From NCBI RefSeq assembly GCF_963853765.1, contig NC_088862.1, positions 16,430,001 to 16,494,000 on the forward strand: a stretch of 64,000 bases of DNA, read 5' to 3'. This DNA is from Magallana gigas. Taxonomy: Eukaryota. A program made the translations under genes and the position numbers. The notes beneath the pieces are model-generated. The model saw nothing but the letters and a program-made list of their open reading frames with translations. It did not search any database and had not been told where the DNA came from. The number at the start of each line of letters is the position of its first letter. Within the stretch, counting starts at the first letter, position 1. Below are positions 8,055 to 21,399 of this stretch, piece after piece.

Positions 8055-10417
8055 ATGGAAGGTAAATATCACAATTATTCAATTGATCGGTGTAATGCCA
8101 TGATGATGGAATTGATGAAAATTGAAAAACAGAGAATGGAAACTACGAACCAATATTTACCAATTACTATGTACAATGCCATTATGCTATTGATGCAAAA
8201 TGAAAAACAAATTCATTTGGAAACTTTATGTAACAAGTTTCCATTTTTTCTGTACAACGCAAAGATGCTATTATTGGAATATGAAAAACATTTTAAGATG
8301 GAAACTACTTGTAACAATTTTTCAATTACTTTGAACAATTCCATGACGATATTGATGGGAAAAGAAAAACACATGAAAATGAGACGAACTGAAATCGACA
8401 TCTATGACCAACTTTACAATGAGGCATGCAGGGGATATAAATGTCGTGTAAATACCGGGAGCAGAAAAGAAGGATTTATGAAATACTTTTTTAAGATTTA
8501 GATTTCTTCTTCTACCCGACAAGACACCGTGTTGTGTTGAGTTTAACAGAAATGCATAGTCATGACCCTCTCACTGAATCAGTCATTCTTGCGGAATTCC
8601 ATCCATCCATTCCTGGAACGTTTTATCTCTGTTTGAAGGAATCATTTTCAGAAAGTGGTGACATATATAACCAATTTAAGTTATTTCAAAAACATTTTCG
8701 CGGGAAAAAGTATATTCGGCACTATGGGATATTTCAAATTGACAAATCAAAGTTGTTCAACTGTGGTGCTGTTTTTGCAGATGGCTTTGCATGTGGGCAA
8801 TGGCCTCTGCAAACAGATGATTTCATGGCGAGATGTAGGAAATTTGAATGGCCTGCGAAAAATACTCTTGAAAACATGGTGTCCTCTGGCTGCTTCTTTG
8901 CACCGATTGGCAGCAGACAGTCACGCCATGACAATGACCCTAACAGTGATATAGAATGTTGTTTGTCGTTTGTACAAGCTGAACAGATATTAGTACGTGC
9001 AATGAATTACTGTCAGTTTCTTTGTTACGCGTTATTAAAAATGTTTCTTACCGATATTCTCAACAAAAACGTAAAAGAAGAAGAGAAACTTCTTTGTTCG
9101 TATTACATGACGACAGCAATGTTTTGGTGCATTCAAACAGATCCTGGGTATAAATGGTCAAAAGAAAACTTCTTTGAATGTTTCTGGAAATGTTACAAGT
9201 TGCTACTGACCTGGGTGTACGCAGGATATTGTCCGAACTTTTTTATTCCACAGAACAATCTGTTTGTGTGCAGAATTGTAGGATCTAATCAAGATAAACT
9301 TTTCACTGAAATGTACAAGCTCTACAATTTCTATCGTTCCAGAGAAAAGGTCTTGTCTATGTTCCCAATTTTAGAGCAGACAGTGGTATATGGTTCTAAC
9401 TCCCAATTGACAAAACTAATATTTAAACAAGTGCACTTCACGGATCGTCTCATTGCAGAAGCAATTGATGATATCAACAGCCTCCAGGGCCAAGACATCA
9501 TGTATTCTTGGAAATCATTATACTTGTACAAAATTTCACCCATAGATACCTCCAATATTAGGCAAATTTTAATTACAATGCATGTCTTTAATATTTTTCA
9601 TGACATAGCATTGTCTAGGCAAAGCTCATGTAGCTGCAAAACAAAGTGCAAAAATAACAGACAGATTTATAAAAAGCATAAAAAAGTAGGAATGAGCCTA
9701 CTAAAACATACATCAAAATATGGTCCTGCATCGGACCCTTTATATTTAGCATTACTTTGGTATATTGATGGAAATTATTCGCATTCACTTTATATTTTGG
9801 AAAAAACTAGTCGTAGACTTCATCAAAATCATGTCTTCTTTGCCGATAAAGATTATGTCGAGCAGCCTTATACAAGACAAATGCAAGGCAAAAGTATGTC
9901 TGTAAGAATAAATGAAGGTATGGCTTTTTGGATCTATGTTTATTCAAATTCAGCATTTTCTGAATTGAATATTGAAATTAGTTTGCTTAGGAAACAGGAA
10001 TTTCCGGCATGTATAGTCATATCTCCGTTTGTTTTTACGGAGTTCTTAATATTTTTGTGTCACCATAGACTAAAAAGTTCGAGGGCTAATCGTTCCATCC
10101 AAATGCAAACATTACATTCTTTCCTCAAAAGAGACAGTGACCGATATGTTGGACCCGTCATGGGTATCGCCTGGGACATTCTGGGAATATGTCATCACCT
10201 GTCAGGGAATCTAGGACAGGCTTTAAGCGCATATGAAGAGTCAATAAAGAACAGTCACAATGACAATTTAACTAAAGCTGTAGAGAAAAGAATTGCACAG
10301 ACAGTAAATGATATGCTTCTGATGCATGCGCTGATCTGGAGTTCGGGGTCCCGTTCTTCCCTAGTATTGTGTAATTCAAAACTTTCAAACACAATTTCCT
10401 TTTTAAAAATACCTTGA
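8055..10417 (+). pseudogene. cGAS-like receptor (Mab-21/NTase plus C-terminal TPR-like helices), copy 1; frameshift/stop at the catalytic motif (8487-8494), otherwise open
   Basis: TGSRKEGF motif in the frame of ORF 8055-8501; DLD and the rest of the protein in the frame of ORF 8534-10417. Mab-21 signatures FACGQWP, GCFFAPIG, CLSFVQAEQIL, QFLCYALLK, LCSYYMTTAMFW, GYCPNFFIPQNNLF; TPR-like AWDILGICHHLSGNLGQALSAYEES. Confidence 0.85.
8089..8390 (+). repeat. Coding tandem repeat, 81 bp / 27 aa, three full units plus a partial fourth
   Basis: Units start at 8089, 8170, 8251 and 8332; consensus about YNAxMLLMxNEKxxxxETxCNNFPFFL. Confidence 0.9.
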
Positions 10418-16600: not shown

Positions 16601-17613
16601 AAAAAAATTCGTTGAATGAATGTGCAAATAGTCCGAATTTTCTATTCACATACGCCTTGCCGGTAGAGCTCGCTGCGCTCGCTATTATTGCTCTTTGTGT
16701 CATTGCACATCAAACATTATATATTTTATAACCCCTTGGATACACCCTGACTTTCTAGAACTGGACATAATAATGTATTTTATCTAATTCATATGTAGTG
16801 TTTGACTCATGCGGGTAATTTGATCCTAGCCTAATGATGAACCTGCTTTGTAAGGAGACTTAACAACTGTCGCGAATACATATAACTTTTTTGTTTATCT
16901 TAGAAATCTAAAAAACAGTTTCCAAAATCTTAATGTGCATCTAGAGAAAAAAATAATCAAGAAATAATTAATAGTTTTCAACTGTACACATGTAAGAATA
17001 AAAGGAGAATCTTGAGCACCAGGTTTGATTTGGGGAGGGGGGTTGAGTTGGATGTGGAGGATTAACACTTAAGCTTAATCATTTATAGTTATCATTTTAA
17101 CTTGAATATTAGTTATAGATCGCCAGGTAGAAAATAGGACTTCTGATCATATCTCAGTAGATCATTTGTCAATTATGCAAGGCGTAATGTGATTTTTTAA
17201 AACACTTTTTACAAGCTTATGAAACTTTTTTGACCCCAAATTATATTGATGTATTTCTTTAGAAAGTACGGGTATAACAAAGTAAAAACAAGCCAGTAAA
17301 ATGATAATTTCTTCCACGGGACCAATCCTGCTCGTTTTTACAGTAATTTGAATTTAACCATAACCAACTAAAAAACATCAACCTCTGAGCAATCAAGTAA
17401 TTTGTATTTATTTATTGTTATGGAAATATAATTTAATTTGCATCATGATATTTCCATATTAATAATTTACCTCACTTGTTTGTTCAGAGGTTGATATTTT
17501 ATGAATGAGTTTATTTATTGTTGAATTGAAATTATTGTAAAACCGGGCTTGGCAACATGATATGAGTAAAGAATTTGAGTTAGTGAAGCTAATTTATTTT
17601 TTCCAATGCCAGT

Positions 17614-20024
17614 ATGGAAGCTACATATCGCAATTGTTCAGTTGATTTGTGTAATGCCATTATGATGGAATTGATATATATATTATAATAATAATAATTA
17701 TAATATAACATATTATAAAGGCTACACTAGACATCTACCTATTTCTCAGCACAATGCTATTATGCTATTGATGGAAAATGAAAAACAGGTGAATTTGGAA
17801 ACCTTATGTAACAATTTTCCATATTATCTGTACAACGCCAACATGCTATTTATGGGAAATGAAGAACATTTTAATATGGAAACTACATGTAACAATTTTC
17901 CTTTTTTTCTCTACATTGCCATTATGCTAATGATGGAAAATGAAAAACAGGTGAATTTGGAAACTTTATGTAACAATTTTCCATTTTTTTCTGCACAAAG
18001 CCAGGATGCTATTGATTGGAAATGAAAAACATAATAATAAGGAAACTACATGTAACAATTTTTCCATTTCTCTGTACAATGCCATGATGCTATTGATGGG
18101 AAAAGAAAAGCACATTAAAATGAGACGAACTGAAATCGGATCTATGACCAACTTTACAATGAGGCATGCGGGGGACATAAATGCCGTATAAATACCGGGA
18201 GCAGAAAGGAAGGTTTTAGGAGATTCTTTTCAGATTTAGACTGTTTCGGCTACTTGACAAAGCATCGTGTTGTGTGGAGTTTAACAGATTTGCATAGTTA
18301 TGATCAAGTTACAGATTCCTTCATTCTTTTGGAACACCACTCAACCATTCCAGGAACGGTTTATCTCAGTTTGAAAGAATCTTTTTCGAAAAATGGTGTC
18401 AAAATCAACAGAATTAAATTGGTTGAAAACTGTATTCAAAGGAACATGTATATTCGGCACTATGGAATAATTCATGGATTATCATTGCGTTTTAAACGTG
18501 ATTTGGCAGTTGGATTTGCATGTGGCCAATGGCCTTTGCAAACAAATGACTTTATGGCAAGATGTAAGAAATTTGGATGGCCCGCGAAAAATACTCTTGA
18601 AAACATGGTGTCGTCTGGATGCTTCTTAGTACCGATTGGCAGCAGGCAGTCACGCCATGACAATGACCCTAACAGTGATATAGAATGGTGTTTGTCGTTT
18701 GTACAGGCGGAACAGATATTAGTACGTGCAATGAACAATTGTCAATTCCTTTGTTACGCATTATTAAAAGTGTTCATTAAGAAAGTTCTAAACAGAAAAG
18801 CAAAAGAAGAGGAGAAACTTCTTTGTTCTTATTACATAAAAACGGCAATGTTTTGGTGCATTCAAACAGATTCTGGGTATAAATGGTCAAAAGAAAACTT
18901 CTTTGAATGCTTCTGGAAATGTTACAAGTTGCTACTGTCTTGGGTGTATGCTGGATACTGTCCGAACATTTTTATTCCACAAAACAATCTGTTTGTGTGC
19001 AAGATTTTAGGAGCTGATCAAGAGAGACTTTTCACGGAAATGTACAATCTGTATTGTTCTGGAAACAGTGCTTGTCTACTATCACACGTTTACAGACGGC
19101 ATTGAAATATGGTGCTAGGCCCAAAATGACTGAATTAATTTTCAATCAAGTACACTTCACGGATCGTCTTATTGCAGAAGCAATTGATGATGTTAACAGC
19201 CTTCAGTGTCAAGACATCATGTATGCGTTGAAAGCATTACCCTTGTACAAAGTTTTGCCCATAGATACCTCCAATTTTGAACAAATTTTAACTACAATGC
19301 ATGTCTTTGATATTTTTCATGACATAGCTTTGTCTAAGCAAAGCAGGTGTCACTGCAAAACAAAATGCAAAAATAACAGACAGATTTTTAAAAAAACATA
19401 AAAAAGTAGGAATTAGACTCCTAAGGCTGACATCAAAGTATGGTCCTGCAACGCACCCTTTATATTTAGCACTATTTTGGTACATTGATGGAAATTACTC
19501 GCATTCACTTGATATTTTGAAAAAAAACTAGTCGTAGACTTTATCAAGATCATGTCTTCTTCTGGGATAATGATTATGTCGAGCAATCTTACACAAGAAA
19601 AATGCAAGGCAAACCTATGTCTGTAAGAATAAAACAAGGTATGGCTTTCTGGGTCTATATTTATTCAAATTCATCATTTTCTGAATTGGATATTGAAATT
19701 GGTTTGCTTAGGAAACAGGGGGTTCCGGCATGTTTAGTCATATCTCCGTTTGTTTTTACGGAGTTCTTAACATTTTTGTGTCACTACAAACTAGAAAGCC
19801 CTAATGCTTATCGTTCCATTCAGACGTTACATTCCTTCCTAAATACAGACATTGACCGATATGTCGGACACGCCAGAGACATCGCTTGGGACATTCTGGG
19901 AATATGTCATCAGCTGTCAGGGAATCTAGGACAGGCTTTAAGCGCATATGAGGAGTCACTAAAGCACAGCAACGATGACAATTTAGCTAAAGCTGTAAAG
20001 GAAAGAATTAAACACTGTAGATGA
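17614..20024 (+). pseudogene. cGAS-like receptor copy 2; catalytic motifs intact but an early stop and at least five frameshifts
   Basis: ATG 17614 is homologous to 8055; an AT-rich expansion gives a stop at about 17686. Frameshifts at T7 17984-17990, 18138-18139, about 19064-19072, A7 19390-19396 and A8 19520-19527. TGSRKEGFRRFFSDLD at 18194-18241; third Asp at 18500-18502 (RDLAVGFACGQWP). Confidence 0.85.
17648..18131 (+). repeat. Coding tandem repeat, 81 bp / 27 aa, five units plus a partial sixth
   Basis: Units start at 17648 (expanded to 100 bp), 17748, 17829, 17910, 17992 and 18073. Confidence 0.9.
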
Positions 20025-21399
20025 TATGCTTCTTATGCATGCGCTGATCTGGAGTTTGGGGTCCCGTTCTTCCCTATTAATGTTAAATATATAACTTTCA
20101 GATTAGCTTTACCTTTAAAAAAAAAAAAGGGCCTTGGATCCTCCTGCTTAAACCAGAATCTGTCAGTCCTCCTCTAGAAAAAAAATTCTAGATCCACGCA
20201 TATTGTTATAAATTAAAATGAGGGCTCAGAGTTTGGAGTTAGTTTGGAGTTAGTTGAGGAACAATTGAATCTGAAAACATGTTGCGAATGTGAAGCTTTT
20301 TACTACTGTAAATTCCTATTATATTCCTATGGTAATAAACGAATATTTAGCACTTTAGTTCGTATGATATACAGAATGGTTCCAGATCTTATAGATGGAC
20401 ACAATATGGTAAAAGTTACCTTCCGTCGGGTATTTAATTTTAATATAAAGGCTCATTGTTATTGTTTTATTGTTTTGATTTTTCCGTTAAATTTCTGCAA
20501 TACTCGTTTTATTGTAGTTTTCCAAATAAAGTGGACCATGCACAGTCTTTACTTATAAAAAACCACATTGAAAACCATTTATACATAAACCAAAGTTGAA
20601 TCAGTTAAAAAGATATGAATGTTGATGTTCATAGGATGCGCACCATGACTATATTGCTGGTTCCAGTCAATGCCAGTAAATATTGCAAGATGTACAGCTT
20701 CTCGGCATGCGTTGGTTTACATCCTCGTAAACCCAATTTACCATTTCTTCCATTTTGCAATATAAAATACATCCTGAACCTCGTCATGTTTTGAGGATTT
20801 ATACTTTGAGATTTACCAATACAACCATAATTTGTGAAATAAGAAGTTTTTTTTAGATGTATAGTAGATATTTTTTGTAAAACTTTATGGAAGAGCATAG
20901 AGACAAATACAAAATAAAAATTTGGCAAAATGTATTTTAATTGTTTGTTCTTAATTCGAAAGGCGGTTTTACCGAAGAATAATTTTGTGATTGTTAAAAA
21001 AATGATGTGAAATACACGTCGTATTATGTAAAGTACATGTATATCAGTGTTAAATATGAGCACAATGCCAAAATCGGATAATGAATAAAAAAATTACACA
21101 ATTCTAGTAGAGATTCCATGAAATTCTAAAATGATCACTTTGGAAATGAAAGGAAGCCTCAGGTAATTATTTTTTGTAAAAATTTCAATCTCGTTTCAAA
21201 ACGTTACCTGCATGAACTGATTTTATATAACTGTTCTTTATAATCGCCAATCTACATATTACATGTCAAATTTTACAAAATAAAAAATGAAATTACAAGG
21301 TCAAAACAGACAGAATGAACAACTGCCATTTAGTCAACTAAATGTTACGTGAAACTGGAAGATTTGACAAAATGACAGAGGTATGCCACTCAGTCAAAA

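What the first reader, a model, noticed from the sequence alone, without database searches (positions are those of the whole stretch)
8055..8420. cGLR N-terminus built from a variable-copy 27-aa repeat that amplifies the receptor's own first helix
Seen: both paralogs start with exact 81-bp tandem units, about 3.5 in copy 1 and about 5.5 in copy 2. The last partial unit (NNFSISLYNAMMLLMGKEKHIKMRRTEI) runs straight into the NTase core. From family knowledge it resembles the usual first helix of mollusc cGLRs (xSxxLYxxLxxxxGxExxxxxRR). Inference: this helix was serially amplified into a Met/Cys/Asn-rich helical array. In cGAS and cGLRs the N-terminal/spine region shapes ligand binding, oligomerisation and auto-inhibition, so a copy-number-variable array could tune ligand length or activation threshold. 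I do not know of this architecture being described.
Basis: partly seen in the sequence, partly recalled or inferred. Interest (0 to 1): 0.75.

Follow-up and report, generated by a model that had tools for sequence, protein, structure and literature searches.

The report
Repeated first helix on bivalve cGLRs
Two neighbouring cGAS-like immune-receptor genes begin with 4 and 6 diverged copies of the 27-residue piece that normally opens the enzyme core. The architecture is real and occurs in an intact paralog and in a relative's spliced mRNA, but both genes in this window are broken and the extra copies evolve almost without constraint.

Summary
The 81-bp (27-codon) tandem array is real. It has 4 units in copy 1 (8076-8399) and 6 in copy 2 (17635-18140). 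The units are not exact: DNA identity is 57-73% in copy 1 and up to 86% in copy 2.

The last unit is the first structural element of the cGAS-like core. The model aligns to human cGAS from residue 161, starting exactly at the first residue of that unit (Z 24). All other family members examined carry one such unit: 85 of 88 database homologs, and the array-region search of this genome found no array outside this cluster (at least 127 paralogs). So the reading 'own first helix amplified' holds, and copy number does vary (1, 3, 4, 6).

Both window genes are pseudogenes. Copy 1 has a frameshift inside the GS...DLD catalytic motif and Asp-to-Val at the third catalytic acid. Copy 2 has an AT-rich insertion and several frameshifts.

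An intact 774-aa paralog with 4 units lies 27 kb upstream of the window. An 87%-identical spliced transcript from another sample starts at the same first ATG.

The extra units are uncharged and evolve at dN/dS of about 1.0-1.45, against 0.3 for the core. Many relatives are frameshifted within the array. A tuning function is unsupported, and a tolerated, labile N-terminal extension is more likely. This is a new variant of a known kind, of modest interest.

The parts
8055..8075 (+). Copy 1: start codon (A at -3, G at +4) and 7 N-terminal codons before the array
8076..8156 (+). Copy 1 unit 1 (YSIDRCNAMMMELMKIEKQRMETTNQY), the most diverged unit
   Evidence: nearest relatives are unit 1 of the other genes (77-79%; 100% to its twin L009)
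8157..8237 (+). Copy 1 unit 2
8238..8318 (+). Copy 1 unit 3
8319..8399 (+). Copy 1 unit 4, the core-proximal unit: the genuine first element of the cGAS-like core (short helix, Gly turn, start of the spine helix)
   Evidence: the equivalent residues 89-115 of the intact paralog align with human cGAS from residue 161; pLDDT 84-95
8454..8462 (+). Copy 1 T-G-S of the NTase h[QT]GS motif, still in the first frame
   Evidence: G135 and S136 invariant in 49 sequences
8487..8503 (+). Copy 1 frameshift. After the T6 run only 'aa' remains where relatives have a full codon, so the catalytic D-L-D (8495-8503) falls in frame +2 and frame 1 stops at 8499-8501
   Evidence: The same lesion is in the 99.5% twin L009. 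It is absent in relatives P0094 and P0104
8534..10417 (+). Copy 1 downstream open frame (627 aa): rest of the NTase core, Mab-21_C and a helical TPR-like C-terminal domain
8771..8773 (+). Copy 1 codon of the third catalytic acid, GTT (Val) here and GAT (Asp) in the twin L009 and in intact relatives
   Evidence: this column aligns with the catalytic Asp of cGAS in the V-D-I/L strand
17340..17396 (+). Copy 2 5'UTR exon, followed by an intron of about 210 nt (17397 to about 17606) that begins GT
   Evidence: transcript L011 nt 1-57 match here at 91% and then jump to just before the ATG
17614..17734 (+). Copy 2 start codon, 7 codons and unit 1. Unit 1 is broken by an AT-rich replacement at 17676-17709 (34 nt where the relative has 14), which gives stops and a frame change
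17735..17896 (+). Copy 2 units 2 and 3
17897..18059 (+). Copy 2 units 4 and 5: a later duplication of the unit 2-3 block (u4 is 86% to u2; u5 is 81% to u3). Unit 5 has 82 nt, with a T7 run at 17984-17990 where the others have T6, which shifts the frame
18060..18140 (+). A 1-nt loss at its end (18138-18139) shifts the frame again
18141..20030 (+). Copy 2 remainder: GS...DLD and Mab-21 domains are recognisable, but the frame is lost again near 19055-19105 and later

Best explanation
The feature is a lineage-restricted N-terminal extension of a bivalve-type cGAS-like receptor. The receptor has an NTase core, a Mab-21 helix bundle and a TPR-like helical C-terminal domain.

The extension arose by tandem duplication of the 81-bp segment that encodes the first structural element of the core: a short helix, a Gly turn and the start of the spine helix.

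A 4-unit array is ancestral to a small clade. Later unequal crossovers made a 6-unit array (window copy 2) and 3-unit arrays (relatives L012 and P0094).

In intact members the array is translated from the first, well-placed AUG. It is predicted helical but without a confident fold.

Only the core-proximal unit is conserved. The extra units are uncharged, Met/Leu/Asn-rich, and evolve at about the neutral rate. They are best read as a tolerated, unstable appendage. If it acts at all, it would act through protein contacts rather than nucleic-acid binding.

Both genes in this window are pseudogenes.

Shown: the repeat anatomy, unit-by-unit orthology, fold and motif membership, the disruptions, an intact paralog, and a spliced transcript in a relative. 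Inferred: the crossover mechanism, translation of the array, and the lack of a strong function.
For: - Period-81 arrays.
- Unit i of each gene is closest to unit i of the other genes, and units 4-5 of copy 2 derive from units 2-3.
- The unit HMM counts 4, 2 and 3 units in P0001 to P0003 (P0003 has 4 once its truncated 5' end is read) and one weak N-terminal match or none in the other 85 homologs.
- The array-region search of this genome matched only the four C10 cluster loci and one single-unit paralog on C3; the core search scored at least 127 paralogs, mostly with open frames of about 690 aa.
- G135, S136, D147 and D149 are invariant and D236 is nearly invariant.
- The PDB profile hits cGLR1 at 4e-23, cGAS at 1e-17 and MB21D2 at 4e-15.
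- The AF2 model has pLDDT 81. Foldseek ranks cGAS first, and VIA gives Z 24 with residues 89-430 aligned to human cGAS 161-521.
- An intact 774-aa ORF lies at L008 3323-5647.
- Transcript L011 lacks the 206-nt 5'UTR intron, has an in-frame TAA upstream of the ATG, has no upstream ATG, and has AATAAA near its end.
- dN/dS of units 1-3 is 1.04-1.45, against 0.30-0.35 for the core and 0.37-0.45 for the C-terminal domain. Fisher tests give p = 0.002-0.013.
- Units 1-3 have net charge 0 and pI 7.0, while the core has net charge +21 and pI 9.35.
- Many relatives are frameshifted inside the array.
- Window disruptions.
Against: - Some positions of the extra units are well kept across 19 units: N7, A8, M10, E22 and T23 at 80-100%. 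The frame stays open over 81 codons in three diverged intact genes. Both hint at some constraint.
- A dN/dS above 1 could reflect diversifying selection rather than neutrality. The counts are small (about 30-50 substitutions).
- Expression of the intact paralog in this species was not shown. Only short, paralog-like contig pieces lay on it.
- The intact paralog has GG instead of GT at the intron donor used in the relative.
- Whether L011 comes from RNA is inferred from the missing intron, not from a run record.
Confidence: 0.68

Rival explanations
1. One reading: the array is an adaptive, copy-number-tunable module that sets ligand length preference, oligomerisation or activation threshold of the receptor.
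For: - Copy number differs among genes: 1, 3, 4 and 6.
- The array sits directly before the spine helix, which in cGAS responds to ligand binding (established knowledge).
- dN/dS at or above 1 is also what a diversifying immune surface would show.
- A few motif positions are conserved.
Against: - The extra units carry no net positive charge.
- The fold is not confident, with pLDDT 38-69 in the full model and 45 when modelled alone.
- Three of four genes in this genome, and many relatives, are broken, several within the array.
- The clade is tiny compared with at least 127 single-unit paralogs.
Confidence: 0.15
2. The array is not part of any working protein: the whole array-bearing clade is decaying, and apparent intact ORFs are recent survivors or start downstream.
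For: - Pseudogenes dominate.
- P0002 has a stop in unit 1 and restarts at a later Met.
- The units are Met-rich, so downstream starts are always available.
- No full transcript of L008 was seen.
- L008 has a GG splice donor.
Against: - The core and C-terminal domain of the array-bearing genes L008, L011 and L013 show purifying selection, with dN/dS 0.3-0.45.
- L011 is a spliced, full-length transcript whose first AUG opens the array in good context.
- The frame is kept through the array in L008, L011 and L013.
Confidence: 0.12
3. Assembly artefact: the repeats or the frameshifts come from mis-assembly or homopolymer errors.
For: - The lesions lie at T-runs (copy 1 T6 at 8487-8492; copy 2 T7 at 17984-17990).
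- The locus lies in a 99% tandem duplication.
Against: - The same array occurs in independent short-read assemblies from other samples.
- Copy 2 has several independent lesions, including a 34-nt AT-rich replacement.
- Copy 1's frameshift is shared with its twin, which also differs from it at other sites.
Confidence: 0.05

Closest known systems
Bivalve cGAS-like receptor radiation, including cGLR-TPR fusions (Li et al. 2023, PMC9980059)
   Same: - The GS / DxD / D active-site motif, the Mab-21 helix bundle and the cGAS fold.
- A basic core (pI 9.35), as in nucleic-acid-sensing cGLRs.
- Over a hundred paralogs in one genome.
- A TPR-like C-terminal domain.
   Different: That paper describes no N-terminal tandem repeat: a search of its text for repeat, tandem, extension, coiled and spine gave nothing relevant. 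Here the first element of the core itself is multiplied 3-6 times.
N-terminal domain of vertebrate cGAS (about 160 residues before the catalytic domain)
   Same: It is also an extension placed directly before the spine helix of the catalytic core. The model aligns with human cGAS from residue 161.
   Different: From established knowledge, the cGAS N-terminus is disordered, strongly basic and binds DNA and membrane lipid. This array is predicted helical, net-neutral, repeated, and derived from the core.
OAS2/OAS3 and multi-cGLR fusions
   Same: They also grow the protein by internal duplication within the same NTase superfamily.
   Different: Those duplicate whole NTase domains. Here only a 27-residue sub-domain element is duplicated.
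Coding minisatellites and repeat-number variation in immune receptors (such as LRR number variation)
   Same: An in-frame tandem unit whose number changes by unequal crossover, and fast protein evolution.
   Different: The units here are old and diverged (57-73%), not a young homogeneous minisatellite. No binding role for the units is known.

Membership tests
cGAS-like receptors (criteria of Li et al. 2023, PMC9980059) | Active-site motif h[QT]GS [X8-20] [DE]h[DE]h [X50-90] h[DE]h | tested here: met
   Intact paralog L008: N-T-G-S, 10 residues, D-L-D-C, 84 residues, R-D-F. G, S, D and D are invariant and the third D nearly invariant in 49 sequences. The third D aligns with the catalytic Asp of cGAS. 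Two 'h' positions are N and R, so the match is not strict.
cGAS-like receptors (window copies themselves) | The same active-site motif, readable in one frame | tested here: not met
   Copy 1 has a frameshift between GS and DLD, and Val at the third acid. Copy 2 has the motif locally, but the frame is broken before and after it.
cGAS-like receptors | Sequence homology across the NTase core and the C-terminal helix bundle | tested here: met
   Pfam Mab-21_C scores 1.5e-14, above its cut-off. Mab-21 NTase scores 2.5e-4, just under its cut-off. The family profile hits cGLR1 8gjy at 4e-23, cGAS at 1e-17 and MB21D2 at 4e-15.
cGAS-like receptors | Predicted structural homology to cGAS / CD-NTases | tested here: met
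   Foldseek ranks cGAS first, with TM 0.65-0.67 by target. VIA gives Z 24.3, rmsd 3.4 A, about 290 aligned residues, model 89-430 against cGAS 161-521.
cGAS-like receptors | Ligand-activated synthesis of a nucleotide second messenger | not testable with these tools
   This needs recombinant protein and nucleotide assays.
TPR-fused cGLRs | Recognisable TPR repeats C-terminal to the cGLR core | tested here: inconclusive
   A single TPR_2 match at residues 698-728, E 0.0028, 18 bits against a cut-off of 27. The C-terminal 340 residues are all-helical in the model.

The most novel reading that the evidence does not exclude
The extra copies of the first core element are under diversifying selection and act as a length-variable helical stalk. 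This stalk would control self-assembly or auto-inhibition of a cGAS-like receptor, so that unequal crossover gives the population receptors with different activation thresholds.
Probability: 0.12. Interest if true: 0.7.

Novelty: new variant of a known kind. Interest (0 to 1): 0.36.

Why it matters
cGAS-like receptors have radiated enormously in bivalves, and how they diversify is largely unknown. Growth by multiplying a sub-domain element of the catalytic core, directly ahead of the spine helix, is a route not described for this family. It also offers natural 1-, 3-, 4- and 6-unit forms for testing what the region before the spine helix does. On present evidence the extra units are weakly constrained and most carriers are dead genes, so this is more a case study in the birth and decay of immune genes than a new mechanism.

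Tried and rejected
- **Self-association.** Complex prediction on two copies of residues 1-88 scored 0.00, with the verdict 'no answer'. It is no evidence either way.
- **AF2 of the N-terminal 141 residues alone.** With a 10-sequence alignment the model had pLDDT 45 and helices only, so no usable fold.
- **ESM Atlas search.** A feature search with residues 1-88 gave no usable hit.
- **Expression in this species.** No listed run holding copy 1 is on record as RNA. Eighteen guessed-RNA runs hold 17-23% of its sampled words. Laying four of them on the intact paralog gave only 55-283-nt pieces at 95-99% identity, mostly on conserved parts and hardly any on the array. These are probably paralogs. 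Expression of L008 and of the window copies stays open.
- **Exact-protein look-up of L008** found nothing on record.
- **AT-rich stretch in copy 2 unit 1 as an intron.** Rejected: there is no GT donor, and the relative's transcript is colinear there with 14 nt in its place.
- **Simple haplotig duplicate.** Considered for the two gene pairs. The 99% block ends at the second gene, which is only 88-90% identical. The 16 kb after it has no match of 500 nt or more to the window, so a plain false duplication does not fit. This was not settled.
- **P0103**, a 408-aa hit with 5 stretches, is an unrelated low-complexity repeat.

Full report
**Observation.**
Tandem Repeats Finder reports period-81 arrays at 8160-8371 (70% matches) and 17751-18109 (78% matches). 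The repeat finder puts the copies in the same register.

From the ATG at 8055, copy 1 reads 7 codons and then four 27-codon units: 8076-8156, 8157-8237, 8238-8318 and 8319-8399.

Copy 2 starts at 17614 and has six units, the last at 18060-18140.

The units are not exact. DNA identity between units is 60-73% in copy 1 and 62-86% in copy 2. The period, position and approximate counts are confirmed; 'exact' is not.

**State of the two window genes.**
Copy 1 is open for 148 codons. After a T6 run at 8487-8492 it keeps only two bases where relatives have a codon. The catalytic D-L-D (8495-8503) therefore falls into frame +2, and frame 1 stops at 8499-8501. A 627-codon frame follows at 8534-10417.

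The codon of the third catalytic acid (8771-8773) is Val. It is Asp in the twin copy upstream.

That twin (L009) is 99.5% identical over 7.7 kb. It shares the frameshift and has a further one. Relatives P0094 and P0104 read through this site.

Copy 2 carries several lesions:
- a 34-nt AT-rich replacement in unit 1 (17676-17709);
- an extra T in unit 5 (17984-17990);
- a 1-nt loss at 18138-18139;
- further breaks near 19055-19105.

Both are pseudogenes.

**What the genes are.**
The downstream frames match Pfam Mab-21_C above its cut-off.

A 49-sequence family alignment has G135, S136, D147 and D149 invariant and D236 nearly invariant. Its profile hits solved cGLR1 (4e-23), cGAS (1e-17) and MB21D2 (4e-15). 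The third Asp falls on the catalytic Asp strand of cGAS.

An AlphaFold2 model of the intact paralog (pLDDT 81) matches cGAS first in Foldseek. VIA-align gives Z 24.3 with about 290 aligned residues.

This meets the three in-silico criteria that Li et al. used for cGLRs (PMC9980059). The window copies themselves fail the motif criterion.

The closest named homologs, at about 30% identity, are uncharacterised proteins of oysters and pearl oysters. The host is therefore probably a bivalve.

The genome holds at least 127 scored paralogs out of 404 candidates. Nearly all have single open frames of about 690 aa.

**The unit is the core's own first element.**

A unit HMM finds one weak N-terminal match in the closer single-unit homologs and none in most of the distant ones. 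It finds 4, 2 and 3 units in the three closest Logan proteins. P0003 has 4 once its truncated 5' end is read.

In the model, the alignment with human cGAS begins at residue 89 against cGAS 161. Residue 89 is exactly the first residue of the last unit. That unit and the spine helix have pLDDT 84-95.

**History.**
Unit i of each gene is most similar to unit i of the other genes, so a 4-unit array predates the split of these genes. Units 4-5 of copy 2 are a later copy of its units 2-3 (86% and 81%). L012 and P0094 have a fused unit 2/3, leaving 3 units.

Within this genome, the array-region search matched only the four loci at C10:16.40-16.45 Mb and one single-unit paralog on C3.

**Is there a working version?**
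Twenty-seven kb upstream of the window, L008 holds an intact 774-codon ORF with 4 units and a complete motif.

Contig L011, from another sample, is about 87% identical in DNA. It has these features:
- it lacks the 206-nt 5'UTR intron;
- it has an in-frame TAA and no ATG upstream of the start;
- it has A at -3 and G at +4;
- it has AATAAA near its end.

It is therefore a spliced mRNA whose first AUG opens the array.

Expression of L008 itself could not be shown. Its intron donor reads GG.

**Constraint.**
Between the intact genes, dN/dS is as follows:

| Region | dN/dS |
|---|---|
| Units 1-3 | 1.04-1.45 |
| NTase plus Mab-21 core | 0.30-0.35 |
| C-terminal domain | 0.37-0.45 |

The difference in non-synonymous to synonymous counts is significant, with p = 0.002-0.013.

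Comparisons between units give 0.8-0.9.

Units 1-3 have net charge 0 and pI 7.0. The core has net charge +21 and pI 9.35.

The array is predicted helical but at low confidence.

Many array-bearing fragments in public assemblies are frameshifted, often at T-runs inside units.

A few positions are well kept across 19 extra units: N7, A8, M10, E22 and T23.

**Reading.**
The architecture is real and, as far as the papers searched show, undescribed. The evidence favours a tolerated, unstable N-terminal extension over a tuned functional module. A protein-contact role cannot be excluded. The self-association test gave no answer.

I rate this a new variant of a known kind, of modest interest.

Noticed in passing
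window 1-20342 and G000:C10:16392264-16413843: A tandem segmental duplication about 36.6-37.7 kb away. The first 16.7 kb is 98.6-99.4% identical, but identity drops sharply to 88-90% exactly over the second cGLR gene and its promoter. The next 16 kb has no match of 500 nt or more to the window. This could be conversion, replacement or a haplotype mosaic.
   Followed up: partly
L008 3107-3108 (G000:C10:16411106-16411107): The intact paralog has GG where copy 2 has the GT donor of the 5'UTR intron, at the junction that the relative's transcript L011 uses. A GT lies 4 nt downstream. The retained intron would add upstream ATGs.
   Followed up: no
window 17984-17990 and 8487-8492; proteins P0092, P0093, P0097, P0098, P0100, P0107: Frameshifts in array-bearing genes recur at short T-runs inside or just after the units, in this genome and in independent assemblies.
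   Followed up: partly
whole genome G000: At least 127 scored paralogs (404 candidates) of this Mab-21/cGLR plus helical C-terminal family. Most are uninterrupted frames of about 690 aa, in clusters on C2, C6, C7, C8, C9 and C10.
   Followed up: partly
I did not examine it.
   Followed up: no
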